Assembly: GCA_002269645.1 (NCBI GenBank)
Contig: NIVC01002405.1
Coordinates: 62,001-126,000 of the forward strand
DNA from: Macrostomum lignano
Taxonomy: Eukaryota
Direction of reading: 5' to 3'
DNA: 64,000 nt
The notes under the pieces are model-generated. The model searched no databases. It had not been told where the DNA came from and worked only from the letters and a program-made list of their open reading frames with translations. Below are positions 5,713-62,107 of this stretch, piece after piece (within the stretch, counting starts at the first letter, position 1; each line of letters begins with the position of its first letter). Position numbers and translations under genes: made by a program.

Positions 5713-6056
5713 CTACTAAGGTGTTGCCGGTCACCGGTTTTATCTGTATTCTGATAAGCACAAAGCTTGCCAAACAAATTGCTTCCTGAGCACAGAGAGC
5801 TCATCCCCGGGCGTGTCGATTCTTAAGTTGGCCACAAACTCTGGCCTTCGCCTCGCCTTTGCTCGGACAGCCGCTACAACGGCGAGCTTAGGGTCGGATA
5901 AATGCTCCCCGACATCAGGTAAACAGCTTCTCGTAGTTCGCTGTGGCCTTCACAGCTGCCGGCCTAATCCATGAGCTATTTTATGTTAATAATTAAGACT
6001 GCGGAAATTTCCCCGAGCACGCTTCTCTCCGCAACAGTTGCTAACTGCAATCAGCT

Positions 6057-7190
6057 GCCCCTCCCTCTGCTCCTCCCTCTGCTCCTCCCTCTGCTCCTCC
6101 CTCTGCTCCTCCCTCTGCTCCTGCCTCTGCTCTTCCCTCTGCTCCTGCCTCTGCTCCTGCCTCTGCTCCTCCCTCTGCTCCTGCCTCTGCTCCTCCCTCT
6201 GCTCCTGCCTCTGCTCCTCCCTCTGCTCCTGCCTCTGCTCCTGCCTCTGCTCCTCCCTCTGCTCCTGCCTCTGCTCCTGCCTCTGCTCCTGCCTCTGCTC
6301 CTCCCTCTGCTCCTCCCTCTGCTCCTGCCTCTGCTCCTCCCTCTGCTCCTCCCTCTGCTCCTCCCTCTGCTCCTGCCTCTGCTCCTCCCTCTGCTCCTCC
6401 CTCTGCTCCTGCCTCTGCTCCTCCCTCTGCTCCTGCCTCTGCTCCTCCCTCTGCTCCTGCCTCTGCTCCTGCCTCTGCTCCTCCCTCTGCTCCTCCCTCT
6501 GCTCCTCCCTCTGCTCCTGCCTCTGCTCCTCCCTCTGCTCCTGCCTCTGCTCCTGCCTGTGCTCCTGCCTCTGCTCCTCCCTCTGCTCCTCCCTCTGCTC
6601 CTCCCTCTGCTCCTGCCTCTGCTCCTGCCTCTGCTCCTGCCTGTGCTCCTGCCTGTGCTCCTGCCTCTGCTCCTGCCTCTGCTCCTCCCTCTGCTCCTGC
6701 CTCTGCTCCTGCCTCTGCTCCTGCCTCTGCTCCTCCCTCTGCTCCTCCCTCTGCTCCTGCCTCTGCTCCTGCCTCTGCTCCTCCCTCTGCTCCTCCCTCT
6801 GCTCCTGCCTCTGCCTCTGCCCCCTCTGCCATTGCCACTCCCTCCACCCTCTGCTCCTGCCTCTGCTCCTGCCTCTGCTCCTGCCTCTGCTCCTCCCTCT
6901 GCTCCTCCCTCTGCTCCTGCCTCTGCTCCTCCCTCTGCTCCTGCCTCTGCTCCTGCCTCTGCTCCTGCCTCTGCTCCTCCCTCTGCTCCTGCCTCTGCTC
7001 CTGCCTCTGCCCTCTGCCCCCCTCTGCCATTGCCACTCCCTCCACCCTCTGCTCCTGCCTCTGCCCTCTGCCTCTCTGCCATTGCCACTCCCTCCACCCT
7101 CTGCTCCTGCCTCTGCTCCTCCCTCTGCTCCTGCCTCTGCCCTCTGCCCCCTCTGCCATTGCCACTCGCTCCACCCTCTGCCTCTCTCTG
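6057..7190. repeat. 12-bp pyrimidine-rich minisatellite (CCTCTGCTCCTS)
   Basis: Long tandem array; produces the LLPL/GAEG/SRGR ORF artefacts. Confidence 0.97.
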
Positions 7191-8319
7191 GCACTCCTCC
7201 CAGCCACCAGTCAGAGAGAAATGGCTTGCAATGCCTCAGTTCATTGTGAATAATGGTGCAGCTGCCCGAACGTCACCTCCACTCCCGGTTGGGCCTACAT
7301 CTCATCTCTATATCTAGCGTATTCACCACTGAGTCTTAGCCTTATAATTCTGAAATGAGATAGCATCTCATCTTTCCTTGAGCAATTTTTTGCACTCGGT
7401 CCAGCCTCTCCAAGATGTACTGCATCCCTTTGCGCATGTCCCCCGCAATATTGCCTGCTTATTAACGGTGCAGCTGCCATCCGGTCTCTCGGTCAGCGGC
7501 CTGTGCCGGGTCTGTTTACTCTGCCTCCAGCCAGTAGTGATTTCTCAAACTGTGCTCGCCACGGCATCAGTGCGTGCTCACTGCCTGCAATGCTCAGCCT
7601 TGCCCCCCGAGCTGAGCACTATCTGGAAAAACACTGGGCCACCTTCTCCTTCAGATAATCTCCTCAATTGAACCTTTTATCTCCATTGTCCTGCGTTTTC
7701 CCACCTCCCCACCTCCCCTCTCCCCTCTCCCTCTCTCCCCCTTTCCCTCGCACATCTTCGCCCATTCCATCGGCTTCCCGTCATCTCCGACTTGAATCAG
7801 TACAAAATGCACTGCTGCAAGACTAAACCTGCAATAGCATGACGTGCCCTCATCCGTGGAGAAGAGTTTAAATAGTCACCCCTGCTAGCCGGGCAGACTG
7901 TATTTAATTACCGACTGTTCTAAAGGAGAGCTTGGAAGACCCAAAAATCTCCCAGGAAAAAGCCAGCCAGGGCGAGATTCTAAGAAAAGGCAGCTCCCGA
8001 TTGCTGTCAAATTTGTGAGAAATGACCTAAAAGGTTTTGTATTTTAGCACAGGAACGGAGGCTGAGGAAACTTCTATGCTGGTTCTATCGATCCACTCTG
8101 GATTCCTTGCTGCTTTTACATTCCCAACCCTCTCCTGCTCTACAGCTTGCTCGTCCGTCAACTCGGAGGCTTGATGGTCTTCAACCAGCTGGCCTGGAAA
8201 CTGAGTGTCCGACATGCGCGCGTGTTATCACGGATTTGTACCGATTTGTACTAATCCAAGATATTGGAGCTTTCCCCACTCTCACCTACCTTATCTCTTC
8301 CTCATTCTATGATCTCTGG

Positions 8320-9483: not shown

Positions 9484-10611
<1,128 letters not shown>

Positions 10612-16864: not shown

Positions 16865-17560
16865 CCATGAGTCAGAGCATGAGTCAGTGCAGGATGTACC
16901 AGTTTTGGAGTATTAGTCAGTGCAGGAGGATATACCAGTTTTGGAGCATGAATCAGTGCAGGATGTACCAGTTTTGGAGCATGAGTCAGTGCAGGAGGAT
17001 GTACCAGTTTTGGAGCATGAATCAGTGCAGGAGGATGTACCAGTTTTGGAGCATGAATCAGTGCAGGATGTACCAGTTTTGGAGCATGAGTCAGTGCAGG
17101 AGGATGTACCAGTTTTGGAGCATGAATCAGTGCAGGATGTACCAGTTTTGGAGCATGAGTCAGTGCAGGAGGATGTACCAGTTTTGGAGCATGAATCAGT
17201 GCAGGATGTACCAGTTTTGGAGCATGAGTCAGTGCAGGAGGATGTACCAGTTTTGGAGCATGAATCAGTGCAGGATGTACCAGTTTTGGAGCATGAGTCA
17301 GTGCAGGAGGATGTACCAGTTTTGGAGCATGAGTCAGTGCAGGAGGATGTACCAGTTTTGGAGCATGAGTCAGTGCAGGAGGATGTACCAGTTTTGGAGC
17401 ATGAGTCAGTGCAGGAGGATGTACCAGTTTTGGAGCATGAGTCAGTGCAGGAGGATGTACCAGTTTTGGAGCATGAGTCAGTGCAGGAGGATGTACCAGT
17501 TTTGGAGCATGAGTCAGTGCAGGAGGATGTACCAGTTTTGAAGCATGATTCAGTGCAGGA
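16865..17560. repeat. 33/36-bp minisatellite (ATGAGTCAGTGCAGGAGGATGTACCAGTTTTGGAGC)
   Basis: About 20 tandem units of two length variants. Confidence 0.95.
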
Positions 17561-18469
17561 GAGTGTACTAGTTTTGGGTCAAAATAGTCAAGCTTGATTC
17601 CGCGCCAGGTGCAACAACTCTTCTCGCATCAGTGCATTGTAACTTATAGCCAATTCAGCTTTACATGTCCAATACATCACTGTGTTTCACAGTATATTTA
17701 TGAAATGAGTCGCGAACGACAGCCGTCTCATCATTCCTGTATTGGCAGGTTCTGAACTCTTTACTAATAATCACAGTCTGTGCATCGCTGGCTCCATCAG
17801 CACTACCAACTGAATTTGCCTGTAGCCATCACTGCTAAACCCCATATTTTCGCTTGTAAACAAAGCGTCCCTTTCGTGGACCAATGATAGTCCTGTCAGT
17901 ACTTCTGCCACCGCCACAGCATCACTAAACCAATTTTCCTTTTTAATGCAAGAAACCGAAGCACCTAAACTATCCTCTGCCTTTTATTTTTCAATTTTCG
18001 TGTCCAACTTGGTTGAAAAGTAATTAAATCCGTAAAAACCCGAACGACTCTACTCACAAGCAAGCGAGCGAATGCATCGCATACTTTAGTGTCTTTAGAA
18101 AATCATTTTGAAGACTCTTATTACAAGGAAAATAGAAATTATAGCGATATTAAGCATTGGGATTCAGAATATTTTGAACAGGTCCTTGTCTGATTTGTGC
18201 CAAAAAAGATTTTTCAACTGATGAAGTTTCTATAGTGGCCAGAAAAAGCGGGACGGAAATCATAATTAACGGGAAGTAAGTCAATCAGTTCGATTATCTA
18301 AGCTCGCAGATGAATAATATAATACATTACTATGCAAAAAATAGGCCTCCTCAGCATTGGTGCTCATATATGTGAGCGAAATCAGTCAGCGAAGTAGGGA
18401 TAAAAACCGCCCCAGTTACCATGCGGATGTGATGAATCAAGCAAAGCATAACGAGCGTAGCGAGTCAGC

Positions 18470-24605: not shown

Positions 24606-24800
24606 ATGACTGCGATTATTAATAACATGCACTTTCGAATTTTCTTATTTTTATTGTCGATCGCGTGTTGCTTTGGACAGGCTCATGCATTCAATGCTGG
24701 TGACACAATCGCTTTGATTCTTGGATTGGCTATCGGGATCTTGGGAATTTGTGCGTGCATCGGCGTGTATGCCCGTAGAAAGGCAGGAAATTCTGGATGA
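24606..24800 (+). CDS. SMIM30: Small integral membrane protein 30 homolog (64 aa)
   Basis: AFNAGDTIALILGLAIGILGICACIGVYARRK matches my recall of human SMIM30 AVEAGDAIALLLGVVLSITGICACLGVYARKR. Acceptor CCAG lies just before the ATG, and a 3'UTR intron runs 24812 (GTAAGT) to 27256 (TTTCAG). Confidence 0.88.
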   Translation: MTAIINNMHFRIFLFLLSIACCFGQAHAFNAGDTIALILGLAIGILGICACIGVYARRKAGNSG

Positions 24801-28320: not shown

Positions 28321-30117
28321 ATTGTAGACATGACTCTGTCACCTAACAGTAGAAACCTTCATATCCTCTATATTTCACATTGTCAAACAATCAAATTAGC
28401 ATGCCATTTCGCAACTCCAAAATTTTATAAGACTTATGAAAGTGGTTAAGTTAAGAAAGTGGATTTCATAACTTAAGTCTTAATTTATGAAATCGATAAC
28501 TTAATAATACAATAAAACTTGGTGCTGTGGAATTTAGATCATATGAATATGAAAGTTTGGTCTTGTTAAACTTACAGTGTATTCAGTTTTTTTCGGTAAG
28601 CGATAAATTTTTATCAAAGCTGCCTCTTTAGAACCACGCGTCTGTCAAGGCAGTAAGTACATGTACAACATTTGGTCAGTTCACATAGCCACCGCGAAGG
28701 TCTCTGCACTTTTCCCCCAAGTCGTATTCCCAGAGAGTATTCCACGTATTCCAGTAGATAAAGACTCGATCCTTCTCCAGCAGTTGCGGGCGCTTCCTAC
28801 ACGGATGGCATGTCGAAATTTCTCCTGAAGCAGCCAGCAAGTACATGTAGTTGCTGTTGACAGCTGCACCACCTGGCACCGGCCCAGCAGGACGCCGCCT
28901 CGCACATCAAAGAAAATCACGTGCATGACATCCAGTCACTGCCTGCGGCCTCCCAGATAATTCGTTTGTCCTTCCCTGAACAACCAGCTAGAACCGCTTT
29001 CGCCCGTCGGATCAGATTGAGCCAAAAGTCCGTATACACCGGTTGCAGCCGCCTTGCAAACCATTTCTGGCGTCCGCTTGCTCTGCAGAAACTGGAACTT
29101 CATCACGACGCGCAGATCGGGATTCGTGAACGATTGCTGCATGGCCATCACAGACAGCTGGGAAGCATAGTGTGGAAGCATAGACGTCGGAACGTTTTAA
29201 AAAGAATTGGCGTGTTCCCCCATAGCTTTTACTGGGCTGGGGACATGTCCCCCTGTACCCTCGGTAAGCGACGCTCCTGCATAGAATTATCTTTTTTTAT
29301 GAAGTCCTCATCCACTAATTTAAGCACTCTATTTGGAGGAAAATATATTAAAAATTGCTAAAAAAAGTGGTGGGGACATGCCCCCCCCACGCCCCCCCCT
29401 CATTCTGACACCTATATGTGGAAGGAAGGCTATCCGTCTTATTGAGATGCATGTCTTAATTACATTAAAGGAAGCTTTCAATAGCCTATATTAGCCCTCG
29501 TTTTTTGTGGCGACGTTTCATTCGTGAAAAATTCTGTTTAAGCAACTAGAATTGTTATGCTAGTGAACCAAAAGCTGGAGCACAGTACTGGCTGATACTA
29601 AAAAACGGTCGACTTTATTCGTGTCATTTAAAAAAATATTGCCACATGCAAATCTAGTCTGTAGTCAAGCGCTCTATTGTCTGTACCCACGTACTGCAAT
29701 TTTCCGTTGCAAAAATGTCTTACTTTCTACTACGAGTAGAATAATTAGCTATTTGAAGCCTACCCGAAATTGCAATTCAAGTGTTAAGATCTGATTTCTA
29801 TTGAGTTTTCGAAACAATGAAAATAGTGGAAATTTTATTGCCAAAATGAATTAATCGATTAGACACAAAACAAGTCATACGGGACCATTGCAAACTTTTT
29901 GGGGTAGATTAGTTAGTTAATAATGTGCATAGAAGTAATGAATCTCTATAAACGGGATTGAGAAATACATGCTTGAGACTCACTATACTGTAAGTGTACA
30001 TCGGGCAATATGGCGTGTACGCAGTTAAAAAATTAAATGCATCAACGGCAACAGTGCGTACAAATATCAGACCCCTCCGAGCAAGATGCTGCAAAAGCAC
30101 CATGAAAATATGACAAC

Positions 30118-30139
30118 GAAAGCGAAAATTTTCGATTTC
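30118..30139. promoter_or_regulatory. Back-to-back inverted pair of IRF-E/ISRE-like cores upstream of UBL gene 1
   Basis: GAAAGCGAAAA|TTTTCGATTTC: two GAAANNGAAA cores forming a near-perfect 22-bp palindrome. Confidence 0.55.
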
Positions 30140-30235
30140 AAAATAACACCGCTTCTGGATCTGACTCAGATGCTCCAGAAATAGATTTTTTATTAATATC
30201 ATAGCGGGACTGCAAGGTGGGGCATGAGTCCAATT

Positions 30236-30244
30236 TTCTTGGAA
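30236..30244. promoter_or_regulatory. GAS/STAT-type site TTCTTGGAA upstream of UBL gene 1
   Basis: Matches TTCYNRGAA; 215 bp upstream of the TATA box. Confidence 0.45.
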
Positions 30245-30427
30245 AATCCAAGCAACATTCAGCAACTTGCTGACAGAGTACACGGTCTTATTGGCTCTCA
30301 GTCTGCGCTGTTCTCTGCTGTCCAATTCGCCCTCCGCACCCGTACCGACAGTCCGTGGGAGCCCCAGTCCCAAGGTCGGAATTGCTCGCTTATGATGAAA
30401 CCGCCGCGTCATGTCTAAAATTGGCGC

Positions 30428-30458
30428 CGAAATCGAAAACGGCGACAGTCTATATAAA
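30428..30458 (+). promoter_or_regulatory. IRF-E/ISRE-like 13-mer CGAAATCGAAAAC plus TATA box (TATATAAA) of UBL gene 1
   Basis: 13-mer at 30428-30440 is identical to 32856-32868; TATA at 30451-30458, 96 nt before the ATG. Confidence 0.65.
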
Positions 30459-30546
30459 CACGGCAAGGAAATGCCGTGGAAGAGCTAAGCGAGTGCAAGG
30501 CTTCAACTTCTAAAAATCTTGAGAAGGTCTGCTTTTTTAAGAAAAT

Positions 30547-31029
30547 ATGTCAGCAACGGACAATGCACAAAGGCAGCTCATCCGAAGGGCCATCGACAGC
30601 ATCGCTGATGGCAGCGCAGGCCAAGCCGCTCACTTGGAGCAGGAGCGGAGACGAGCTCTCGAGCTCCAGGCGGAGCTCCAAGCTGGCCCCCAGCTGCGTC
30701 CCGGCCTGCTGTCCGAGGCCGAGTCCGTGGCCGAGAACTACCTGCGGCAAGTCGGTCGGCTGGCCCCGAACGAGACTCTGATCGGCAACATGTCGGTCCG
30801 CGTGCACGGCACTGACGGGCGGCCGATCCAGGTGTCGGTGCCCCGCTGGGAAACCATGGAGTGGCTTCAGGAGCGGATCGGCGGCGGCGGCCTCATCATG
30901 AACGGTCGGCCAGTGGCCAAGGACAAGCCACTATTTGATCTTTGGCTGCGCAACCAGCTGGGCAGCCTGACGGTTGCCAATGGCAGCCAGCCCAGAGTGC
31001 AAAGCACGGTGCGCAACGCCGGCGGATGA
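30547..31029 (+). CDS. Ubiquitin-like protein 1 (160 aa): helical N-terminal extension + UBL domain ending in free GG
   Basis: Intronless GC-rich ORF. MSVRVHGTDGRPIQVSVPRWETMEWLQERI..LIMNGRPVAKDKPLFDLWL..VQSTVRNAGG* follows the ubiquitin beta-grasp pattern. A paralog lies at 33003. Confidence 0.85.
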   Translation: MSATDNAQRQLIRRAIDSIADGSAGQAAHLEQERRRALELQAELQAGPQLRPGLLSEAESVAENYLRQVGRLAPNETLIGNMSVRVHGTDGRPIQVSVPRWETMEWLQERIGGGGLIMNGRPVAKDKPLFDLWLRNQLGSLTVANGSQPRVQSTVRNAGG

Positions 31030-31372
31030 GCTTGGCTGGCCACTCGGTTAACTAATTTTTTTGCTTTACCCTTTTTTGCTAGTAGTCTTTATGGCAGCGG
31101 TGATTTTTAACTAACTGTATGGAAACATATTAAAGTCCCAAATGATCACGCGGGAAAAAAATCCGACTCATTTCCTGGAGCTTCTGAAACTTCACCTGGC
31201 TGCCGGAAGCATCCCATTTATATAGATTTAGATGAGTTTCGTGCATGTTTTTGTGTTGCTATGCGATGCTATTTTCGATAGCAAGACCTGAATACACGAG
31301 TTCATCTATATCTTATAAATGTACTTTAGCTAAGCTAACTGTAGCCTATGAGATCGGTTAGTAGCGGTCTGG

Positions 31373-31750
31373 GGGCGAGAGAGCAAGCTGGTCTGGCCCA
31401 GCTGAGCGGCAGCCCCCGGGGCGACGGCGACCAGGTGAAGACGGGGGGCTTCCGGGAACTTGCGTCGGAATTTATCCCATATTTGTCAAAAGCACCGCTG
31501 CTGTAAAACTGCATGCTGGCCCACACGGGGCCTTGATTGATTTTATGCTTGCTTATATACTCTATTTACTCTCGACTTTGTCCGTATGACAAACCAAAAA
31601 ACTCGCGCGTTAATTTTTCTAATTGAAATAATTTCGCTTCTCGATTTCTGCCGAATCAAAGCGGCCGACAAAAAGATTTTTTGACCCTCCTCGACGTCAC
31701 CCCGGGGGCTGCCGCTGGCAGCTGCGCCAGACCAGCTTGCTCTCTCGCCC
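31373..31750. repeat. ~58-bp GC-rich inverted repeat pair between the two UBL genes (MITE-like)
   Basis: 31373-31430 (GGGCGAGAGAGCAAGCTGGTCTGG..) is the reverse complement of 31691-31750 with few mismatches. No TSD found. Confidence 0.7.
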
Positions 31751-32467
31751 GCGATTTCTACTGTGATTTGCGGAACATCTACTGATTATAACAATATTTA
31801 AGTTCTATTTCTTATAATGGACTTATTCAAGAATTTAAACTTCTGCTTACGTACGAGTCGGGTTTACTGTAGAAGCTCGCCCGAAAATTCAATAAATAAC
31901 TTGTTATTATTTACTCATGAACTTTCTATTAATTACTAAATAATCAAAATCCCGACCACCAAATGCTTCAAACGACATGTGTGAAAATATACAGAAATTT
32001 TACTATAGTCCACCAAATAATAAAAATCCTAAGAAGTTAAAAAATTGTCTTTGACTCCCACGCGTTGTTAATCTTTTATTCCACATATTTAGTTGCTGAG
32101 CAGGAGGCATTTGGCTAACTTGGAAAATCCAACCTACAATAATTGTTTAACCTTCGGGGTGCTAAAAATAGAACGATTGGACTGCAGCTGCAACACTGCA
32201 TTAAGCCATGCAGCGTACACTTCTGCTTACTGCCTCCGGCCGTTACAAAACGCCTACAAGGTGAAAAATTTCAATATTTTAAACCATCCTCTAATCACTC
32301 AAAGAACAAATCCGGTAAAATAAACTTTTATTCGTCAGAGCTTGGCGCCTTCAGTTCGTGGTAGAATTGAATTTTTAAATCATTTATCTCATGAGGTCAG
32401 CCTTATACATGTAGAAAGGCTTGGATGCTGTACTCGTAGTCTCATGGATGCATTCTTGTAGATTCTA

Positions 32468-32628
32468 CACGCAGGCCACATGTCAGCCGCGAAGCCTCTC
32501 TATCCGGCCCTCGGGTCCTTCGAAACTTCAAAATAGCAATCCGGCCTGCTCAATCTTCTCAGCTCTCTTCTCATCCCTTTCTTCTCTCCTCCTATTCTGT
32601 CTCTTATCTCTTCTCTCATCTCTCAAGG
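32468..32628 (-). mobile_element. Fragment of the hAT/Charlie-like MITE family also at 47290 and 50609
   Basis: GGCCACATG..GCCGCGAAGCCTCTCTATCCGGCCCTCGGGTCC..GAAACTT..AATAGCAATC is the reverse complement of segment 50990-51070. Confidence 0.7.
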
Positions 32629-32708
32629 CCATTGATTATTTATCTGGCCCTTGAAGTGTAGAAGCTGAATATAGAAGTGAGGATTTTTACACAAATTTTT
32701 CGAACAGT

Positions 32709-32747
32709 TTCTAGGAAATTGTCGTTTTCCTAAAACATTTCTAGGAA
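32709..32747. promoter_or_regulatory. Tandem GAS/STAT-type sites TTCTAGGAA x2 upstream of UBL gene 2
   Basis: Sites at 32709-32717 and 32739-32747, 227 and 197 bp upstream of the TATA box. Confidence 0.5.
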
Positions 32748-32855
32748 ATAGCAAACGGCATCTCTCATCCAAAAATAGGCATAGGAGGGCTACGCACGTT
32801 CACATACTGACGAATTTTTTTAAAAAACTGACACCGTCACTGCTAAACTTAGCAT

Positions 32856-32942
32856 CGAAATCGAAAACTCTGACTCATCTAGAGCCGATTCGAACTTCGA
32901 CACACAGAGTCGCAGCAGCCCCGGAGACTGTCATCTATAAAA
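32856..32942 (+). promoter_or_regulatory. IRF-E/ISRE-like 13-mer CGAAATCGAAAAC plus TATA box (TATAAAA) of UBL gene 2
   Basis: 13-mer at 32856-32868; TATA at 32936-32942, 67 nt before the ATG. Confidence 0.65.
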
Positions 32943-33002
32943 GCAGCCAGCCACAATGGCTCGGCCCTGTAAAATCCACGGACTGCTCCAACAGATTGAG
33001 AC

Positions 33003-33506
33003 ATGGCCAGCCGACAGCAGAGCGAGCAACTCACCCGTAGAGCCATTGCCAGCGTAGCCGACGGCAGTGCCGCCAAAGGGCCTGCATCGGAGGCTGCTGA
33101 GAACGAGCGGAGACGAGCTCAGGACCTGCAGTCGGAGCTTCAGGCCGGAGGGCGACCGCGGCCCGGCCTGCTGTCGGAGGCGCAGTCCTTGGCCGAGTCC
33201 TACCTGCGACTGGTGGGCCGCCTCGCGCCCGGAGAGAGCCTGCCGGACGCCATGACTGTCAGGGTTCGCCGAGCTGACGGTCGGGAGTTCGAGGTCCACG
33301 CGGCCAGGTGGGAGACGGTCGGCCGACTCAAGGAGCTCATCAGGCAGTGGCAGGGCAACTTCGGGGGCCTCACCGTACGCGGTGGGGCGCTGAATGACGA
33401 CGCCCGGCTGTTGTATGACATGTGGCTGCGCGATGAACTGGGCAGCAGGACCAGCCCGAACCCGCCCCCTGTGCAGCTCATTGTGACGGGCAACTACGGC
33501 GGCTGA
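33003..33506 (+). CDS. Ubiquitin-like protein 2 (167 aa), paralog of 30547-31029, ending in free GG
   Basis: MTVRVRRADGREFEVHAARWETVGRLKELI..LTVRGGALNDDARLLYDMWL..VQLIVTGNYGG*. It shares RRAI.S.ADGSA, ERRRA..LQ.ELQAG, RPGLLSEA.S.AE.YLR.VGRLAP with paralog 1. Confidence 0.87.
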   Translation: MASRQQSEQLTRRAIASVADGSAAKGPASEAAENERRRAQDLQSELQAGGRPRPGLLSEAQSLAESYLRLVGRLAPGESLPDAMTVRVRRADGREFEVHAARWETVGRLKELIRQWQGNFGGLTVRGGALNDDARLLYDMWLRDELGSRTSPNPPPVQLIVTGNYGG

Positions 33507-35301
33507 ACTGTAAGAGTACAGTTTGAAAACAATCTCCAAATAATTAAGACTTGTTAAACTTTCTGTTTCTATCGACTTGCTCGGTTTTATTCGTAATCTA
33601 GCATAACCGTACTTGTAATAAAAGAGTGATATTTTATGGAGTGCTTATCTACATGTTTGAAAACGTTGTACATATTGAGATATTGCAAATTAAAATTCTT
33701 CCATTTCTTGTTTGTTGTTTGTTAAAATTTCGTTTATAATACTTACTAGTAGGCTGGTTGGAAAAAGGCTGGTAATATTTTGGCTACATGGCAAAATGCT
33801 ACTAACTAACTCTGGTTCTTACCGCGTAGGTAAATTCAGTCATCAGTAAGAGAATCGATTATGCAGTCGCAGTCCTCTCGCGGTTTTGGCTACTGGTTTA
33901 ATTCTGATCTATCTTAGCGGACTAACTGGTCTTTAATTTGTAGGTTGCTGCCCACCAGGTTCCTGAGATTCCCTAATCCTAGTGTTTAGCGATTAAAGAA
34001 TTGAGAAAGGAATCCAGGAGATTATTTTTTTGAAAGATTTATAACAAGAATTCAATAGGTGGATATATTAATATTAATCCCCTCAGGTGCAAACTCCCCA
34101 ACTCTCTGTCTATCCATTAACATTTTCCAAGCTAAAACTACTGATGTACTGTTTAAAGCATATCTACCCTAATAAAATTAACTTACGTGTACATTGAAAC
34201 TGCGGTAGGCCCGAATGTAAAAAGTAATATAAGTAATATTTACATAGGCCCGAAATGTAAAAAACCGAAATATCGCAAGCCCGAGATACGAGCTATCCGA
34301 ACTAATCAACTCCGAAAACGAAAATAGCGTTGGGCGCTGCTAACACTTTCAGGTTTGTGATATTTCGGGTTCGTGATGCCCCGACTTACGAGTATCGAGT
34401 ACGTGTGCATTTAAACTTAGGCGCCAGAGCAATGACCCAATCTTCGATGACCTGTCTCCATGTATGACCCGAAGGCAATCAAAAAGGCACACCAAACGCG
34501 GGAGGGTCGATTTAGGCGAAGTCATCAAGCAGGAGCGTCGAGTCCAATGATTCGTAGCCATCCCGTTGCAAGGCAGCCTGAACAACAAAGACCAGACCAT
34601 CTCACGCGATCCCAATAGCCTTTTTGCTGCGGATAAACAAACGATCAAAGAACTGCATTTGGCGGCCCCTAAAAGAGTCTAGACCCTCTAGGCATAGATT
34701 TTATTTATTGATGAGCTGCCCAAAAATACGGCCCCATTCCAATCTTTTCAAGCTTCTTTGATAGCCGCAATGTGGCTTTGAATTTTGAGTTGTCCATCCA
34801 TCTGCCACTTTTCCAGTTATCCAATTTAGCTGCATCCTTTGATACACCCATCGGAGACAATTCCTTTGGGAATGCAGCACATGCTGCGATCGCACGGTGT
34901 GCCCCACCACCTACTCAATCCGGGCTTGTATATAAATTTCATCCCCAAGAATCCTGAGCGATGGGATAAAAAATTCATCCGCTCTCTACAGCAGTGTAGC
35001 CGGTAAGCTACTAACAGTGACATGATTTCGATCAGCACACACTGAACTGCTGGACTTTTTCAAGAACCGTCATGCAGAGCAGAGATACTCCAAAAGCATT
35101 TGCCTGCCCGCATTAGCAGGCGCTCCACTAAGAATTTTTATGCTCCCTGATTTTAAGAGCAAATGCTCTCAGAGCCGACAGTCTAGCTATTGCAGTTAAT
35201 GCACGATTTAAGCCATTGAAGCAAGGTACCCAGCTGCTACACTTCATCATTTTAAAAACTGAGACTAGGCTAATTTTACATTATTAACCCGCAGCGCATA
35301 C

Positions 35302-36396
35302 ATGAATTCCTCCGCGGCCAACGACTCGACAGGCAACGGCGCAGCCGGCCAGTACACGCCGTGGTACTGGGACCCCAGCTGGAACTTTTTCGTTCGCCAC
35401 GTCTTCTCTTGGCTCTTCCCAGTCCTGGTATTGAGCGGCGGTTTTCTTAATGCCGCTTGTTTCATCGTCACGGCTGCCAATAGAAAGTCATTTCCTAGAA
35501 ACAGCCGGCTTTACATGCTGATGATTAGCGCCACCGATACTGTGATCCTTCTGGCCCAGGGCCCAATCTACTACTTGGAGATCACGACTATCCTAGTCAC
35601 GAATCCGCAGTCCTGGTATCGGCCGGTGCGCAGTCTGAGCGCTGTAGTGATGCGCATCTATTACATCCTCACTTACCTGTTGGTGTTCGGGGCTCCGTTT
35701 TTGCAGCTGGGCCTCACAGTCGACCGCGCCGTCGCTGTCTGTTTTCCGTTGAAGGCCAAGCAGCTGATGAATCGACGAAACAGCGCCATCTTGCTAGCCA
35801 TCGTTCTGCTCCTGACCGTGTCCTTCCCCGCCCTGACCATCTACCTGATTGAGTGGGATCCGGAGCTTCGAGACGTGAGTGTAGTCGATGATGATGCGTA
35901 TTACATATTTTACACGCAGTACGAGCTCTATGTTGGCCGCCTGATGCTGGCCGTCCTGCTGCTGCTGGGCACCACGCTGATCTGCGTCATGCTGCTGCGC
36001 AGCGCCCGCGGCCTCGGCGAGACGAACGACGGCGACGACAAGAGGAAGAGTCGCGCCATTCGGCTCAGCCTGGTGCTGGTCATTCTCAACGTCAACTTCC
36101 TGATGTTCACGCTCCCATGGAGCCTGCTCAGCGCCACTGAGACATTTGGGGCCTTGGACTGGATACCCCTCAAAGATCGGAATCGCATCTTTGAGTACCT
36201 GAACGCGCTACTGTTTATGAATAACGCCTTCAACTGGATGGCCTACTTCATGGGCCAGGGGTTCCGCGCCAACTTCGTGGCCACGTTCCGCCTCGACCGC
36301 TGCTTCGGCAACCCGGGCGGCGGCCGGGGCCGCGCGGGCTCCACCTACACAGGGAAAACTTCGACCGTTTCAGGGCCCGCCGTCACAGCTACCTGA
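35302..36396 (+). CDS. Class A (rhodopsin-like) GPCR, peptide-receptor-like, intronless, 364 aa
   Basis: Seven hydrophobic segments. Motifs: TM1 GGFLN, TM2 ISATD, TM3 DRAVAVCFPL, TM6 FLMFTLPW, TM7 NNAFNWMAY, and helix 8 FRANF. N-terminal sequons NSS and NDS. Confidence 0.93.
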   Translation: MNSSAANDSTGNGAAGQYTPWYWDPSWNFFVRHVFSWLFPVLVLSGGFLNAACFIVTAANRKSFPRNSRLYMLMISATDTVILLAQGPIYYLEITTILVTNPQSWYRPVRSLSAVVMRIYYILTYLLVFGAPFLQLGLTVDRAVAVCFPLKAKQLMNRRNSAILLAIVLLLTVSFPALTIYLIEWDPELRDVSVVDDDAYYIFYTQYELYVGRLMLAVLLLLGTTLICVMLLRSARGLGETNDGDDKRKSRAIRLSLVLVILNVNFLMFTLPWSLLSATETFGALDWIPLKDRNRIFEYLNALLFMNNAFNWMAYFMGQGFRANFVATFRLDRCFGNPGGGRGRAGSTYTGKTSTVSGPAVTAT

Positions 36397-37069: not shown

Positions 37070-38170
37070 CTTGTCCCCCCTGTGCCCTCTGTCCCCCCTG
37101 TGCCCTCTGTGTCCCCCTGTGCCCTCTGTCCCCCCTGTGCCCTCTGTGTCCCCCTGTGCCCTCTGTCCCCCCTGTGCCCTCTGTCCCCCCTGTGCCCTCT
37201 GTCCCCCCTGTGCCCTCTGTGTCCCCCCTGTGCCCTCTGTGTCCCTGTGCCCTCTGTCCCCCTGTGCCCTCTGTGTCCCCCTGTGCCCTCTGTGTCCCCC
37301 TGTGCCCTCTGTGTCCCCCTGTGCCCTCTGTGTCCCTGTGCCCTCTGTCCCCCCTGTGCCCTCTGTGTCCCGCTGTGCCCTCTGTGTCCCGCTGTGCCCT
37401 CTGTGTCCCCCTGTGCCCTCTGTGTCCCCCCTGTGCCCTCTGTGTCCCCTGTGCCCTCAGTGTACCCTAGCTGTGCCCTCTGTCCCCCCTGTGCCCTCTG
37501 TCCCCCTGTGCCCTCTGTGTCCCCTGTGCCCTCTGTGTCCCCCTGTGCCCTCTGTGTCCCCCTGTGCCCTCTGTCCCCCTGTGCCCTCTGTCCCCCTGTG
37601 CCCTCTGTGTCCCCCTGTGCCCTCTGTGTCCCCTGTGCCCTCTGTCCCCTGTGCCCTCTGTCCCCCCTGTGCCCTCTGTGTTCCCTAGCTGTGCCCTCTG
37701 TCCCCCCTGTGCCCTCTGTCCCCCTGTGCCCTCTGTGTCCCCCTGTGCCCTCTGTGTCCCCCTGTGCCCTCTGTCCCCCTGTGCCCTCTGTCCCCCCTGT
37801 GCCCTCTGTGTACCCTAGCTGTGCCCTCTGTCCCCCCTGTGCCCTCTGTCCCCCTGTGCCCTCTGTGTCCCCCTGTGCCCTCTGTGTCCCCCTGTGCCCT
37901 CTGTCCCCCTGTGCCCTCTGTGTCCCCCTGTGCCCTCTGTGTCCCCCTGTGCCCTCTGTGTCCCCCTGTGCCCTCTGTCCCCCCTGTGCCCTCTGTGTCC
38001 CCCTGTGCCCTCTGTGTCCCCCTGTGCCCTCTGTCCCCCCTGTGCCCTCTGTGTCCCCCTGTGCCCTCTGTCCCCCTGTGCCCTCTGTCCCCCCTGTGCC
38101 CTCTGTGTCCCCCTGTGCCCTCTGTCCCCCCTGTGCCCTCTGTCCACCTGTGCCCTCTGTCCCCCTGTCC
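37070..38170. repeat. ~16-19-bp minisatellite (CTGTGCCCTCTGTGTCCCC variants)
   Basis: Long tandem array; source of the PLCP/VPSV ORFs. Confidence 0.97.
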
Positions 38171-38829
38171 CCCTACTTACCCTCAGTTCCCTCTTTACCC
38201 TCTTTACCCTCCTTCGCTCCTCCTCTCTCAAACAATTTCAATTTTCCATCGTTTTGAAACTTGAAGCAAACGGTTAACGGCAAATCGGTTAGAGTGAAAA
38301 GGCTCATAATATTCGGTTTTAGAGCTGTTTCAGTTTGCACGAGACAAAACCAGATAAAAAAGGATGTTTACGGGCTAAAATTAAAGTTCAAGCTGGCTTT
38401 GTTTTGACGCGGACCAACCCCTCCCTACTCTCCGCCAGACTGGCGGACAGGCGGATCACGTGGCCTCGGCCATAGGTGGCCACACTGGGAAATATTCGCA
38501 ACAAAGCTATTAAAATTGTGTAGTCAAGAGATAAGAGCCGACTCCCAGATAAGGAGAATTAAAACTACCAGCGTATTTCGCATTAAGCTTCGCTCCAGAC
38601 CACACAAGTTGAATTTTGAGCTTCTGCCTGAGCCTGCCGGTGAATGCAAGAATGTGGGAGTGGGAGACAAGAGGCTGAGCTCAGCTCCTTGATCATTTCT
38701 GTCTGATGGCGTCCATACTTATTTGGGGCGCATTTAGTGCGGTCGTCTGGCGGGAACTCTGACCAATGAGACATTTAAGGTGAAGATAGAATAATACATT
38801 TTCAGGATACAAACAGGGAGAGAAGCTAG

Positions 38830-56097: not shown

Positions 56098-59000
56098 CAG
56101 TAGCAGTAGCAGTAGCAATAGCAGTAGCAGTAGCAGTAGCAGCAGCAGTTGCAGAAGCAATAGCAGTAGCAGCAGCAGTTGCAGAAGCAATAACAGTAGC
56201 AGCAGCAGTTGCAGAAGCAATAGCAGCAGCAGAAGTTGCAATAGCAGTAAGCAAGCGCAATTCCCCATCCCCAGGTGCGCGAGCTGCACCAGATCCACCG
56301 CATCCTACAGATCTCGCTGCACGCCGCGGCCCTGTCCTGGGACACCAACGAGCAGGTTGGCCACATCCTGACCGCCTCCTTCTCCAAGAGCCTGGTGCTG
56401 AAGACCTACGCCGCCTTCATCAACACGTATCCGCGCGGCCTGGAGCTCGTCAGGCGCCAGATGAAGGACAACGCGCCGTTCGCCAGCTTCCTCGGCACGG
56501 CGCAGCGGCGCAGTTCGCACAAGCTGCCTCTGCTGGGCATCCTGGTGCGTCCGGTGCAGCGCTTCCCCCAGCTGCTGCTGGTGGTCAAGGACCTGCTGAA
56601 GTACACGGAGCCCGACCATCCTGACCGGTACGACCTGCTGTACGCGCAGACTCAGATCGAGCACCTGGCCAGCCAGCTCAACGACATCAAGCGCGACAGC
56701 GAGCAGCTCATCTCGGCGCGCCAGATGCTCCGCGCCCTGGGCGTCCACTCCAAGTCGGCGCTGAAAAACTCGCGAATCCGCATCGTCCGCGAGGATGACG
56801 TCAGCGAGCTCCGGGCAGACCGGCAGCAGCAGCACGCGGGCGGCATGCGGATCATCCTGACGACCTACTATGTCCTCTGCACGGGTGCCAGGCGCCGCGG
56901 CGGCCCACAGGAGCTGCTGTGGTACACCAAGCTGGAGGATGTCCGCCTGTCCGGGACCTCGCTAACGCCTGACATGAAGGTCTGTTCGAATTGAATTTTA
57001 GTTCAGTTTGCAGTCAGCAATTTCCAGGGGCGTCGCTATGGATTTTATGGTGGTGGGGGACCGAACTAAGAATTCTACACGTACGTGTACATTATTTTCA
57101 GAATTGGTGTTGTCAGCGCTTATTTTGGCGCCGCAGGCACTCATTTTGGCGCCGCAGGCTCTCATTTTGGCGCCGCAGGCACTCATTTTGGCGTCGCAGG
57201 CACTCATTTTGGCGCCGCAGGCACTCATTTTGGCGCCGCAGGCACTCATTTTGGCACCGAAGGCACTCATTTTGGCGCCGCAGGCACTCATTTTGGCGTC
57301 GCAGGCACTCATTTTGGTGCCGCAGGCACTCATTTTGGCGCCGCAGGCACTCATTTTGGCGCCGCAGGCACTCATTTTGGCGCCGCAGGCACTCATTTTG
57401 GCGTCGCAGGCACTCATTTTGGTGCCGCAGGCACTCATTTTGGCGCCGCAGGCACTCATTTTGGCGCCGCAGGCACTCATTTTGGCGCTGCAGGCACTCA
57501 TTTTGGCGCCGAGGGACTCATTTTGGCGCCGAAGGCACTCATTTTGGCGTCGCAGACACTCATTTTGGCGGCGAGGGACTCATTTTGGCGCCGAAGGCAC
57601 TCATTTTGGTGCCGCAGGCACTCATTTTGGCGTCGCAGGCACTCATTTTGGCGCCGAGGCACTCATTTTGGCGCCGAGGGACTCATTTTGGCGCCGCAGG
57701 CACTCATTTTGGCGCCGCAGGCACTCATTTTGGCGCCGAGGGACTCATTTTGGCGCCGAAGGCACTCATTTTGGCGCCGCAGGCACTCATTATGGCGCCG
57801 CAGGCACTCATTTTGGCGCCGCAGGCAATCATTTTGGAGCCACAGGCAATGATTTTAGCGCCACAGACAATAATTTTGGCGTCACAGGCACTCATTTTGG
57901 CGTCACAGGCACTCATATGGAATTATTATGGGAATTATTGATTTCCATAACGGATCACAAGGTTGGGTGGGGGGGGGGGCAAAGCATTGGAATATACCAG
58001 CTTCTCGTGACTAAACTGTATTTTGCCTAACCGGCAATTTGAGAAAGTGGCATCAGAGGGGATGTTGAACCATCCGAGTCTAAGAATGGAAGCAGGACTA
58101 TCAGCGGATGGCTCTGTTTGCAGTCTTGGTGATTACTGATGACTTCCTGACTAAGTTGGCATCCTCAAAAGGTGCAAAACAGGGAACTGATCAAAGTTCG
58201 CCAACCCATTCGCGACAGGTGAATCTGGAGGAGGTCAGCAACTACCTGAGGATTGTGTCGCAGCGCAGCACGGAGGTGCCAGAAGAGCTGGAGGAGATCT
58301 ACAACAGCCTGCACAGCCTGCTGCACGATCACGCGGTCCTGGTGAAGATCCTCAGCCTGGTCTCCACTCTCAACTTCATTTACCCGGACGTGCGGGAGGA
58401 CCGGCTGCAGGCGCTGCTTGGCAACATGCAGGTGGCCATCCAGCAGAAGAACGAGGAGCTGCGCGTGGCCCAGGGCACCGTGCTGGCGCTCACCGTCAGA
58501 CGGGGCATCCTCGGCGGCGGCGGCGGTGAAGTCAGCCAGTCGATCAGCAGGAAGGCATTCGACATGCGCAACAGCAGGGCCAGAGACGACTGGACCAGCG
58601 AGTTCACCATCCTGAGGCTGGCCCTGCAGCCGGAGAACAATGCGGCGTGGATCACCGAGATGCTGGACGACTTGGGCCTGCAGTCGCATCAGCGGACGCC
58701 GCTGCTGGTTGGCGTCAAGGCGTGCGACCTGAGCAGGTCGATGTTCCAGGTGGGCTGCTGGGGGCTACGCGGGTTTGCAGTGCGAACGCTTTTTTGAGAA
58801 AATTTTCTAGGGAGGAGAAAATAGCCGAAGATGTACATTTGCTAGGGGGAGAAAATAGCCGAAGATGTACATTTGCCAGGGAGGAGAGAAAATAGCCGAA
58901 GATGTACATTTGCTAGGGGGAGAAAATAGTAGCAGATGTACATTTGCTAGGGGGAGAAAATAGTAGCAGATGTACATTTGCCAGGGAGCAGAGAAAATAG

Positions 59001-61875: not shown

Positions 61876-62107
61876 CCTAGTGCCAGGGCTGTGCAAGACC
61901 AACCGAACTCTGTATTTTTATCCAGACTGCTAATTCCCATTTTGATTTCGCAATTAAAACTGCAATGGCTGCAAGTCTTCCATTTGATTTCCTGAAATTT
62001 TCTACTAAAGCAGAAGCAAACTAAAATAATATGCATTTGCGATAATCTGAACTCAATGAAGCAGTGAGCCAGACTGGCAGACATCCTCCTGTATCTGAGG
62101 GTGGCAG

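What the first reader, a model, noticed from the sequence alone, without database searches (positions are those of the whole stretch)
30118..32942. Shared ISRE/IRF-E + GAS promoter footprint on both UBL genes: an ISG15/FAT10-like inducible system in an invertebrate?
Seen in sequence: the two promoters show no overall similarity that I can detect, but both contain the identical 13-mer CGAAATCGAAAAC just upstream of a TATA box (30428-30440 before TATA 30451; 32856-32868 before TATA 32936). Gene 1 also has an inverted pair GAAAGCGAAAA|TTTTCGATTTC (30118-30139). Both have TTCYNRGAA sites about 200-230 bp above the TATA: TTCTTGGAA at 30236, and TTCTAGGAA at 32709 and 32739. Established knowledge: GAAANNGAAA is the IRF-binding core of ISREs (the human ISG15 ISRE reads GAAACCGAAAC), TTCN3GAA is the STAT GAS element, and the vertebrate immune UBLs ISG15 and FAT10 are IRF/STAT-induced. 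Inference: these genes are immune- or stress-inducible UBL modifiers that converge on ISG15 logic without interferon. Caveats: four IRF cores in about 1 kb of promoter far exceeds my rough expectation of well under one. However, I also saw incidental cores at 33560 and 34314 and GAS-like 9-mers near 24495 and inside the GPCR CDS, so single motifs are not proof. Whether this organism has IRF and STAT genes is unverified.
Basis: partly seen in the sequence, partly recalled or inferred. Interest (0 to 1): 0.9.

Follow-up and report, generated by a model that had tools for sequence, protein, structure and literature searches.

The report
Conserved promoter motifs on flatworm ubiquitin-like genes
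Two neighbouring ubiquitin-like genes of the flatworm Macrostomum lignano keep short promoter blocks that resemble IRF and STAT binding sites although the rest of their promoters has diverged, so the blocks are probably real regulatory elements, but nothing here shows which factor binds them or that the genes respond to infection.

Summary
The shared 13-mer is not chance (2 found, 0.02 expected) and is neither a dispersed repeat nor a general core-promoter word (43 genome hits against 31 for the reversed control).

It is the core of a 34-35-bp block conserved between two old paralogs. Four GAAAKCGAAAA sites cluster in about 1.2 kb.

The GAS-like palindrome of gene 1 sits in a 28-bp block that is 24/28 identical to the promoter of a third, remote paralog. 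Variation among the three genomic copies avoids these elements.

The genome is Macrostomum lignano. It encodes about seven groups of IRF-domain loci and one divergent STAT-like gene. The proteins model as three N-terminal helices plus one ubiquitin-type beta-grasp, and all six copies end in Gly-Gly.

Against the interpretation:
- GAAAKCGAAAA is not enriched before TATA boxes genome-wide.
- TTTCYNRGAAA is an 11.6-fold over-represented genomic word that also builds minisatellites.
- The proteins are not di-UBLs like ISG15 or FAT10.
- Induction and factor binding are untested.

Verdict: real conserved cis-elements. IRF/STAT control is plausible but unproven.

The parts
30118..30139 (.). Gene 1 distal element: imperfect 22-bp palindrome GAAAGCGAAAA|TTTTCGATTTC, that is two head-to-head GAAAKCGAAAA (IRF-E-like) sites
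   Evidence: No variable position among the three genomic copies.
30162..30168 (.). TGACTCA (AP-1/TRE consensus) inside the shared 9-mer TCTGACTCA. Weak evidence.
   Evidence: Sharing this 9-mer is not significant on its own.
30232..30259 (+). Block A: AATTTTCTTGGAAAATCCAAGCAACATT with the GAS-like palindrome ATTTTC-TTG-GAAAAT (core 30235-30245)
   Evidence: 24/28 identical to the promoter of the remote paralog at L085 2222-2249. Score 36 against a null of 21 +/- 2.1, maximum 27. None of 334 real controls reaches 36. Invariant in the three copies.
30407..30440 (+). Block B plus 13-mer: CGTCATGTCTAAAATTGGCGCCGAAATCGAAAAC. It holds a CRE-like half site, a TATA-like remnant and the GAAATCGAAAAC element at 30428-30440.
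   Evidence: Invariant in the three copies.
30451..30457 (+). TATA box (TATATAA) of gene 1, 96 bp before the ATG
30547..31029 (+). Gene 1: intronless ORF of 160 aa, ubiquitin-fold protein ending ...VRNAGG-stop. ATTAAA at 31129.
   Evidence: dN/dS among copies is 0.26-0.42. A copy is deposited as PAA83748.1, a hypothetical protein of M. lignano.
32708..32748 (.). Gene 2 distal cluster: TTTCTAGGAAA at 32708 and 32738, with a degenerate TTTTCCTAAAA at 32725 between them (GAS-like, TTCYNRGAA)
   Evidence: The only change among copies is G>A in the spacer, giving TTTCTAAGAAA, which keeps the consensus.
32835..32868 (+). Block B plus 13-mer of gene 2: CGTCACTGCTAAACTTAGCATCGAAATCGAAAAC (13-mer at 32856-32868)
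   Evidence: No variable position inside the block among the three copies; the only nearby change is at 32834, the base just before it.
32871..32877 (.). TGACTCA (AP-1/TRE consensus), 2 bp after the 13-mer. Weak evidence.
32936..32942 (+). TATA box (TATAAAA) of gene 2, 67 bp before the ATG
33003..33506 (+). Gene 2: intronless ORF of 167 aa, ubiquitin-fold protein ending ...TGNYGG-stop. AATAAA at 33617.
   Evidence: A copy is deposited as PAA53219.1 / UniProt A0A267DXA5, 'Ubiquitin-like domain-containing protein'.

Best explanation
The locus holds a tandem pair of old paralogs. Each is a compact, intronless, TATA-driven gene for a Macrostomum-restricted protein with three N-terminal helices, one ubiquitin-type beta-grasp domain and a free C-terminal Gly-Gly.

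Shown: the promoters have diverged to randomness except for short blocks that are conserved between paralogs and spared by variation among the three genomic copies. These blocks are:
- a proximal block ending in GAAATCGAAAAC, a tandem GAAA-N2-GAAA that matches the IRF-E/ISRE core;
- in gene 1, a palindromic double copy of that site;
- distal TTTC-N3-GAAA palindromes of the GAS type. The gene 1 palindrome is shared with the promoter of a third, remote paralog.

Inferred: these are binding sites that co-regulate the family. The best candidate for the GAAA repeats is one of the roughly seven groups of IRF-domain loci, which keep the GAAA-contacting Arg and Cys of the recognition helix. The best candidate for the palindromes is the divergent STAT-like protein. 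Together with the TATA boxes and the lack of introns, this predicts signal-induced rather than constitutive expression. That would be ISG15-like regulatory logic acting on an unrelated, single-domain UBL.

I put the blocks being functional cis-elements at about 0.75, IRF binding at about 0.35, STAT binding at about 0.3, and immune or stress induction at about 0.35.
For: - The 13-mer occurs twice against 0.02 expected.
- The 34-35-bp block scores 36 against 20.4 +/- 2.3 for shuffles, and none of 334 real-sequence controls reaches 36.
- The paralogs are old: 51% amino-acid identity, and 4-fold sites are 51% identical against 35% expected from composition. No alignable 3' flank remains.
- Gene 1 and the third paralog share the 28-bp GAS-like block (24/28) and a collinear CGTCAwGTCTA(T)AAAT block.
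- Among the three copies, variable columns number 0 in 99 bp of gene 1 elements (6.5 expected) and 2 in 82 bp of gene 2 elements (3.5 expected). One of those two keeps TTCYNRGAA.
- Four GAAAKCGAAAA sites lie in 1.2 kb against a background of 0.113 per kb.
- The 13-mer is rare genome-wide, and its other copies have unrelated flanks.
- IRF domain: 19 exon hits over the Pfam cut-off. A conceptual protein scores 65.9 bits. The recognition helices read FRCALNG and FRCALRG.
- STAT-like gene: collinear matches to human STAT3 residues 92-126 (E 4e-7) and 525-651 (E 8.5e-8), plus an SH2 domain.
- A shrimp IRF activates and binds ISRE-containing promoters, so the specificity is conserved in protostomes (PMC4602278).
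- The UBL fold and the GG end are supported.
Against: - No expression, accessibility or binding data were available.
- GAAAKCGAAAA followed within 5-35 bp by TATAWAA is not enriched genome-wide (45 against 66 for the reversed control). The other hits have no obvious downstream ORF, so no wider regulon is visible.
- The third paralog has no GAAANNGAAA in 1.5 kb upstream.
- The flanks of the site match the ISRE and IRF-E consensus only partly: GAAATCGAAAAC against GAAANNGAAACT and GAAASYGAAASY (consensus recalled from memory).
- TTTCYNRGAAA has 34,245 genomic copies and builds tandem arrays, so it may serve a factor or process unrelated to STAT.
- The STAT-like gene has no recognisable DNA-binding domain.
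- A planarian IRF3/4-like gene had no effect in the one immune-type assay reported (PMC13563047).
Confidence: 0.4

Rival explanations
1. The blocks are real cis-elements but are read by other factors and specify tissue- or stage-specific expression, not immune or stress induction. This would fit a young, lineage-restricted gene family expressed in a gland, the epidermis or the gonad. The likeness to ISRE and GAS would then be coincidental. Candidate binders are bZIP factors on CGTCA and TGACTCA, a PRDM1- or zinc-finger-type GAAA binder, and a BCL6/BTB-ZF-like or Rel/NFAT-like factor on TTTC-N3-GAAA.
For: - The conservation evidence is the same as for the main explanation, and it does not identify the binding factor.
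- There is no genome-wide ISRE-plus-TATA enrichment.
- The conserved block also carries CGTCA and a TATA-like remnant, and both promoters have TGACTCA.
- The abundance of the GAS-like word suggests a very widely used factor.
- The STAT-like DNA-binding domain is unrecognisable.
Against: - Tandem GAAA-N2-GAAA in four copies is the textbook IRF arrangement, and IRF genes are present.
- TTCYNRGAA is the textbook STAT5-type site, and a STAT-like gene is present.
- No alternative factor was tested either.
Confidence: 0.35
2. The GAS-like palindromes are local instances of an abundant genomic word, TTTCYNRGAAA, with 34,245 copies. It spreads through minisatellite arrays, repeats or an architectural DNA-binding protein, and it has no gene-specific regulatory role at this locus.
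For: - ATTTCTAGGAAAT occurs 465 times against 8 for the control, and TTTCYNRGAAA 34,245 times against 2,947.
- Arrays with the same core and different spacers occur on C527, C51, C70 and C1.
- The gene 2 sites form a mini-array with a period of about 15 bp.
- The 11-mer also lies inside the GPCR coding sequence at 35491.
Against: - The gene 1 palindrome is embedded in a 28-bp block shared with a paralog whose protein is only 31-32% identical.
- That 16-mer has only 15 genomic copies.
- Single dispersed sites have unrelated flanks, so they are not parts of a transposable element.
- Variation among the copies preserves the consensus.
- At a genome density of 0.045 per kb, finding one 157-227 bp upstream of the TATA in all three family members is unlikely.
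Confidence: 0.2
3. The shared 13-mer is a neutral accident: chance identity, slippage of a CGAAAW unit, or a short gene-conversion tract between the tandem paralogs.
For: - The 13-mer is two tandem CGAAAW units, and (CGAAAT)n microsatellites exist in this genome (L017 and L042).
- The paralogs lie only 2.4 kb apart, so gene conversion is possible.
- Gene 2 coding dS among the copies is oddly low.
Against: - The expected chance count is 0.02.
- Identity decays gradually into a 34-35-bp block (28 identical positions). That looks like old homology under unequal constraint, not a fresh conversion tract.
- The coding regions are only 63% identical in DNA.
- Two more copies of the same 11-mer form a palindrome in gene 1.
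- Variation among the copies avoids all of these elements.
Confidence: 0.08

Closest known systems
Human ISG15 gene and its ISRE-driven promoter
   Same: Both have a ubiquitin-fold product with a C-terminal GG and a proximal tandem GAAA-N2-GAAA element close to the start site. ISG15 C-terminal domains are the top Foldseek hits (TM 0.71-0.77).
   Different: ISG15 has two tandem UBL domains and ends in LRLRGG, followed by a propeptide. Here there is one beta-grasp plus three N-terminal helices, and the tails read NAGG and NYGG directly before the stop. Sequence identity is only 19-22%, no better than to ubiquitin or NEDD8. No interferon is known in flatworms, and induction was not tested.
FAT10 (UBD)
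   Same: Both are made with a free GG end that needs no processing.
   Different: FAT10 is a di-UBL. No specific sequence or fold match was found, and the UBA6/USE1 pathway was not examined.
Ubiquitin / NEDD8 (Pfam PF00240)
   Same: The beta-beta-alpha-beta-beta-alpha-beta grasp fold is shared. Weak profile similarity covers residues 78-136.
   Different: The match is below the Pfam cut-off (13.1 bits against 25.4). It reaches significance only by summing over polyubiquitin repeats. There is an extra 75-residue helical N-terminus, and no relatives were found outside M. lignano among 1.84 billion representative proteins.
Invertebrate IRF-to-ISRE regulation (shrimp IRF on Vago4; oyster IRFs)
   Same: A protostome IRF with a conserved DNA-binding domain acts on GAAA-repeat elements of an inducible gene (PMC4602278).
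   Different: Those cases have EMSA, reporter and knock-down evidence, whereas this one rests on sequence alone. The only flatworm IRF tested so far, in a planarian, showed no phenotype in its assay (PMC13563047).
STAT5-type GAS elements (TTCYNRGAA, e.g. the beta-casein site TTCTAGGAA; Drosophila STAT92E TTCNNNGAA). Recalled from memory.
   Same: TTCTAGGAA and TTCTTGGAA fit the consensus exactly, occur in clusters, and lie about 200 bp upstream of the TATA box.
   Different: In this genome the extended word is 11.6-fold over-represented and builds minisatellites, which is not a known property of GAS sites. The candidate STAT has no recognisable DNA-binding domain.

Membership tests
ISRE / IRF-E cis-element | Tandem GAAA cores spaced by 2 nt (GAAANNGAAA) | tested here: met
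   Four sites share GAAAKCGAAAA, at 30118, 30130 (minus strand), 30429 and 32857.
ISRE / IRF-E cis-element | Flanks fit the consensus (ISRE GAAANNGAAACT; IRF-E GAAASYGAAASY; both from memory) | tested here: inconclusive
   GAAATCGAAAAC and GAAAGCGAAAAT match 10-11 of 12 positions. The 3' AC or AT differs from the CT of the ISRE consensus.
ISRE / IRF-E cis-element | The organism encodes IRF proteins with an intact DNA-binding domain | tested here: met
   PF00605 gives 19 exon hits over the cut-off, in about 7 groups of loci. A conceptual protein scores 65.9 bits. The recognition helices FRCALNG and FRCALRG keep Arg and Cys, and one also keeps Asn.
ISRE / IRF-E cis-element | Bound by an IRF and needed for induced transcription | not testable with these tools
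   This needs EMSA or DAP-seq, reporter mutation and RNAi.
ISRE / IRF-E cis-element | Marks a regulon: the motif is enriched in promoters of co-induced genes | tested here: not met
   GAAAKCGAAAA-N5-35-TATAWAA occurs 45 times against 66 for the reversed control, and the other hits lack downstream ORFs. This was a strict-motif test only.
GAS / STAT site | TTCN3GAA palindrome | tested here: met
   Present at 30236, 32709 and 32739. The extended form TTTCN3GAAA occurs 7 times against 0.97 expected in the window.
GAS / STAT site | The organism encodes a STAT with a DNA-binding domain | tested here: inconclusive
   Pfam STAT_bind gives no hit. A gene on C521 (two more copies elsewhere) matches the STAT3 N-terminal domain (E 4e-7) and linker plus SH2 (E 8.5e-8), and has an SH2 domain at 24.6 bits. 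The DNA-binding part matches only at an SLPVV motif.
GAS / STAT site | Site-specific rather than a generic genomic word | tested here: not met
   TTTCYNRGAAA has 34,245 copies against 2,947 for the control, and occurs in arrays with varied spacers.
ISG15 / FAT10 (di-UBL immune modifiers) | Two tandem ubiquitin-like domains | tested here: not met
   The AlphaFold2 model has helices at 4-20, 30-47 and 56-70, then one beta-grasp at 83-162.
ISG15 / FAT10 (di-UBL immune modifiers) | Specific sequence or structure relationship | tested here: not met
   Foldseek E-values are about 5e-4 to 4e-3 for ISG15, NEDD8 and ubiquitin alike, at 16-22% identity. Profile searches find only polyubiquitin.
Conjugatable ubiquitin-like modifier (type I UBL) | Beta-grasp fold | tested here: met
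   The model has mean pLDDT 70. Foldseek gives probability 1.00 and target TM 0.71-0.80 to ubiquitin-family chains. Confidence is moderate.
Conjugatable ubiquitin-like modifier (type I UBL) | Flexible C-terminal tail ending in Gly-Gly | tested here: met
   All six copies of genes 1 and 2 end in GG followed by the stop codon. The tail has pLDDT below 50. The remote paralog ends in GSG.
Conjugatable ubiquitin-like modifier (type I UBL) | Activated by an E1 and attached to substrates | not testable with these tools
   Neither a dedicated E1/E2 nor conjugates were examined.

The most novel reading that the evidence does not exclude
Macrostomum lignano has evolved its own ubiquitin-like modifier family, with a helical N-terminus, a single beta-grasp domain and a free GG end. 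The family would be switched on by IRF-type and STAT-type factors through ISRE-like and GAS-like promoter modules. That would be a convergent, interferon-independent counterpart of the vertebrate ISG15/FAT10 response in a lophotrochozoan. In addition, the GAS-like palindrome TTTCYNRGAAA, with about 34,000 copies and self-propagating arrays, would mark the cistrome of a dominant and so far unknown DNA-binding factor of this genome.
Probability: 0.15. Interest if true: 0.8.

Novelty: new variant of a known kind. Interest (0 to 1): 0.5.

Why it matters
ISG15 and FAT10 are regarded as vertebrate inventions, and how invertebrate IRFs and STATs choose their targets is poorly known. No IRF target gene is known in flatworms.

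This locus gives a small, concrete test case: two roughly 600-nt genes with mapped candidate elements of 13 to 35 bp. They lie in the one flatworm where stable transgenesis and reporters with mutated cis-elements already work (10.1101/151654; PMC12801592).

If the elements respond to immune stimuli through IRF or STAT, they would be the first defined IRF/STAT targets in Platyhelminthes and an example of convergent 'inducible UBL' logic. If they do not, the locus is still a clean example of paralog footprinting, and it exposes an unexplained, highly over-represented palindromic word in this genome.

Tried and rejected
- Dispersed repeat or general core-promoter element for the 13-mer: rejected. 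There are 43 genome hits against 31 for the control. Six are the three copies of this locus, and the rest sit in coding sequence or microsatellites with unrelated flanks.
- Heat-shock control: rejected. There is no canonical HSE (nGAAnnTTCnnGAAn, the regular expression of PMC12801592) anywhere in the window, and no TTCnnGAA in either promoter.
- NF-kB control: no kB-like site in either promoter.
- Structured RNA: no Rfam family in 29000-35000.
- More family members for footprinting: genome searches with both proteins found only the six copies. Exhaustive HMMER found only polyubiquitins and one remote paralog, P0044, whose locus I then used.
- AP-1: both promoters have TGACTCA within the shared 9-mer TCTGACTCA. 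Sharing 9-mers at this level is within chance once the 13-mer is removed, so I list it only as weak.
- A 15-mer shared by the gene 2 5'UTR and the paralog block is not significant (score 25 against a null maximum of 34).
- 'No STAT in the genome': first suggested by Pfam, then overturned by a full-length STAT3 query.
- My first estimate of the 11-mer density in held loci was inflated by copies of this same locus and was corrected.
- Literature searches for the gene identifiers and for the motif found nothing.


Full report
**Organism and locus**

The window is G000:C2405:62001-126000 in a genome of 764.4 Mb and 5,269 contigs. The near-identical copies of both proteins are deposited as hypothetical proteins of Macrostomum lignano: PAA53219.1 (UniProt 'Ubiquitin-like domain-containing protein') and PAA83748.1. 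The assembly size equals that of Mlig_3_7 (10.1101/151654).

The species is described as allotetraploid with a redundant assembly (PMC12801592). This explains why the locus exists three times, on C2405, C406 and C3112, at 96-97% DNA identity.

**The observation**

- The 13-mer CGAAATCGAAAAC occurs exactly twice in the window against 0.02 expected.
- GAAANNGAAA occurs 11 times against 1.9 expected. Four of these lie in the two promoters, and all four share GAAAKCGAAAA. The background in 159 kb of unrelated loci from the same genome is 0.113 per kb.
- TTCNNNGAA as a 9-mer is at chance (17 against 18). The extended palindrome TTTCNNNGAAA is not (7 against 0.97).

**Is the 13-mer a repeat or a general promoter word?**

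It is neither. Genome-wide it has 43 hits against 31 for the reversed control. Six of them are the three copies of this locus. The rest lie in coding sequence, (CGAAAT)n microsatellites or unrelated DNA, with no shared flanks.

GAAAKCGAAAA followed within 5-35 bp by TATAWAA is not enriched (45 against 66 for the control). The other hits show no convincing downstream ORF. Equally, no wider ISRE-plus-TATA regulon is visible with this strict motif.

**Evidence for constraint**

The two proteins are 51% identical. At 4-fold degenerate sites their identity is 51% against 35% expected from composition, and the 3' flanks no longer align. Neutral sequence between them is therefore close to saturated.

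- gene 1: CGTCA-TGTCTAAAATTGGCGCCGAAATCGAAAAC
- gene 2: CGTCACTG-CTAAACTTAGCATCGAAATCGAAAAC

It scores 36 against 20.4 +/- 2.3 for shuffles. None of 334 real 600-bp segments reaches that score with the gene 1 promoter as query.

Exhaustive HMMER against 1.84 billion representative proteins found one remote relative, P0044. It is a M. lignano hypothetical protein that is 31-32% identical to gene 2, and its gene has introns. Its promoter shares two collinear features with gene 1:

- a 28-bp block, 24/28 identical, centred on the GAS-like palindrome (AATTTTCYTGGAAAATCCAMGMAAYATT; 30232-30259 aligns with L085 2222-2249; score 36 against a null maximum of 27);
- 140-170 bp further on, CGTCAwGTCTA(T)AAAT, which in the remote gene contains its TATA box.

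The 16-mer of that block has only 15 genomic copies against 0 for the control. It is therefore not a high-copy repeat.

Variation among the three genomic copies also avoids the elements. There are 0 variable columns in 99 bp of gene 1 elements (6.5 expected) and 2 in 82 bp of gene 2 elements (3.5 expected). One of those two is a G>A change in the palindrome spacer that keeps TTCYNRGAA.

Together these results make functional cis-elements the best reading, at about 0.75. Gradual decay of identity around the 13-mer argues against a recent gene-conversion tract.

**Candidate factors**

IRF: Pfam PF00605 gives 19 exon hits over the cut-off, falling into about seven groups of loci. A conceptual protein from C199 scores 65.9 bits. 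The recognition helices read FRCALRG (C199) and FRCALNG (C899). They keep the Arg and Cys, and in one case the Asn, that contact GAAA in solved IRF-DNA complexes (the structural knowledge is from memory). A shrimp IRF activates and binds ISRE promoters (PMC4602278), so the specificity is conserved in protostomes.

STAT: Pfam STAT_bind gave no hit and STAT_alpha only a weak coiled-coil match.

- the end of the N-terminal domain (46% identity over 35 residues, E 4e-7);
- the linker plus SH2 region (residues 525-651, E 8.5e-8);
- an SH2 domain over the Pfam cut-off.

Its DNA-binding part is barely recognisable. A STAT-like gene therefore exists, but its DNA specificity cannot be inferred.

No canonical heat-shock element or kB site is present in either promoter, and there is no Rfam match.

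**The GAS-like word is a genome-wide oddity**

ATTTCTAGGAAAT occurs 465 times against 8 for the reversed control. TTTCYNRGAAA occurs 34,245 times against 2,947, an 11.6-fold excess.

Dispersed single sites have unrelated flanks. Several tandem arrays share the same 11-mer core with quite different spacers, with periods of 21, 24 and 25 bp and spacings of about 36 and 53 bp between sites in two arrays on C1.

This cuts both ways. It suggests a dedicated and heavily used binding factor. It also means that a TTTC-N3-GAAA site is a common object in this genome, at about 0.045 per kb.

**The proteins**

Both ORFs are intact in all three copies and end in GG followed directly by the stop codon. dN/dS among the copies is 0.26-0.53, as expected for genes under purifying selection.

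AlphaFold2 (mean pLDDT 70) predicts three N-terminal helices and a beta-grasp domain at residues 83-162 with a disordered tail. Foldseek matches ubiquitin-family chains with probability 1.00 and target TM 0.71-0.80. ISG15 C-terminal domains come first, but they are not separable from NEDD8 or ubiquitin (E 5e-4 to 4e-3, 16-22% identity).

Sequence similarity to ubiquitin is below the Pfam cut-off. It becomes significant only when summed over polyubiquitin repeats. The proteins are therefore single-domain UBLs with a novel N-terminus. They are not members of the ISG15 or FAT10 di-UBL families.

**Verdict**

- The elements are real and most likely regulatory.
- Both transcription-factor families are present in the genome.
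- The products look like conjugatable UBLs.
- IRF or STAT binding and immune or stress induction remain inference, at about 0.3-0.4.
- The strict ISRE-plus-TATA combination marks no wider regulon.
- The GAS-like motif is a generic, abundant word of this genome.

The case is directly testable, because cis-element reporter transgenesis already works in M. lignano (PMC12801592).

Noticed in passing
genome-wide; window 24494, 32708, 32738, 35491, 48140; L081 (C527:282300-283100), L082 (C51:112900-113500), L083 (C70:666400-667300): The palindromic word TTTCYNRGAAA is 11.6-fold over-represented (34,245 against 2,947), and ATTTCTAGGAAAT occurs 465 times against 8. Several minisatellite arrays with periods of 21, 24 and 25 bp (and two on C1 with sites about 36 and 53 bp apart) share this exact core but have unrelated spacers. 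Dispersed single sites have unrelated flanks. The cause is unknown.
   Followed up: partly
G000: C166:335776, C304:38308, C337:262324, C640:278687, C750:20850, C850:71326, C915:112119, C1238:290287, C1269:156441, C1827:195189: Ten further genomic copies of the 16-mer TTTTCTTGGAAAATCC (block A of gene 1), probably 3-4 loci present in about three copies each. They may mark more genes with the same element.
   Followed up: no
L084 (G000:C521:203500-213499), 3513-7521 on the + strand; sites at 5936 and 5977: A divergent STAT-like gene with an N-terminal domain, linker and SH2, but a DNA-binding domain that Pfam does not recognise. Two TTTCTAAGAAA sites lie 41 bp apart in the gap just before the ORF segment that starts at 6035, which could mean autoregulation.
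   Followed up: partly
window 31373-31750: A foldback or MITE-like element lies between the two UBL genes. Its terminal inverted repeats are about 63 bp long (arms 31373-31435 and 31686-31750, 87-97% complementary). It lies within the stretches that align to both other copies.
   Followed up: partly
L045 (C406) and L046 (C3112) compared with window 31790-32290: Structural differences between the genomic copies. C406 carries an insertion of about 2 kb between the two genes, and C3112 lacks about 214 bp there.
   Followed up: no
window 33003-33506 compared with 30547-31029: Synonymous divergence among the three copies is 0.008-0.023 for gene 2 but 0.08-0.10 for gene 1, and about 3-4% in the flanks. 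This suggests gene conversion or synonymous constraint acting on gene 2 only.
   Followed up: no
proteins of window 30547-31029 and 33003-33506, residues 44-81: In profile alignments to polyubiquitin, the stretch before the beta-grasp domain aligns across a ubiquitin-ubiquitin junction, onto the C-terminal half of the preceding unit. This hints at descent from a di- or poly-ubiquitin gene. Each stretch scores only 6-9 bits.
   Followed up: no
window 24606-24800: A small ORF of 64 aa with a signal-peptide-like start and a hydrophobic segment (MTAIINNMHFRIFLFLLSIACCFGQAHA...). TTTCCTAGAAA lies about 110 bp upstream of it, in an AT-rich region of 33-35% GC.
   Followed up: no
window 35302-36396: An intronless rhodopsin-family GPCR (7tm_1, E 2e-10) lies 1.8 kb downstream of gene 2. 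It contains the 11-mer TTTCCTAGAAA inside its coding sequence at 35491.
   Followed up: no
whole window, e.g. 755-1219, 6055-7140, 9484-10611, 16875-17577, 37072-38211, 58802-60229, 62098-62891: The 64-kb window holds about 30 different micro- and minisatellite arrays with periods of 4-37 bp, many of them 0.5-1.4 kb long. Two of them (16875-17577 and 62098-62891) carry TGAGTCA in every unit.
   Followed up: no
L085 (G000:C1930:26000-33200): The deposited remote paralog (BOX15_Mlig019373g1, partial) probably starts at its Met30 (MAPRE...). Its first 29 residues have no in-frame ATG and look like translated 5'UTR. The protein ends in GSG, not GG. About 400-bp units are repeated three times upstream of its promoter.
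   Followed up: partly
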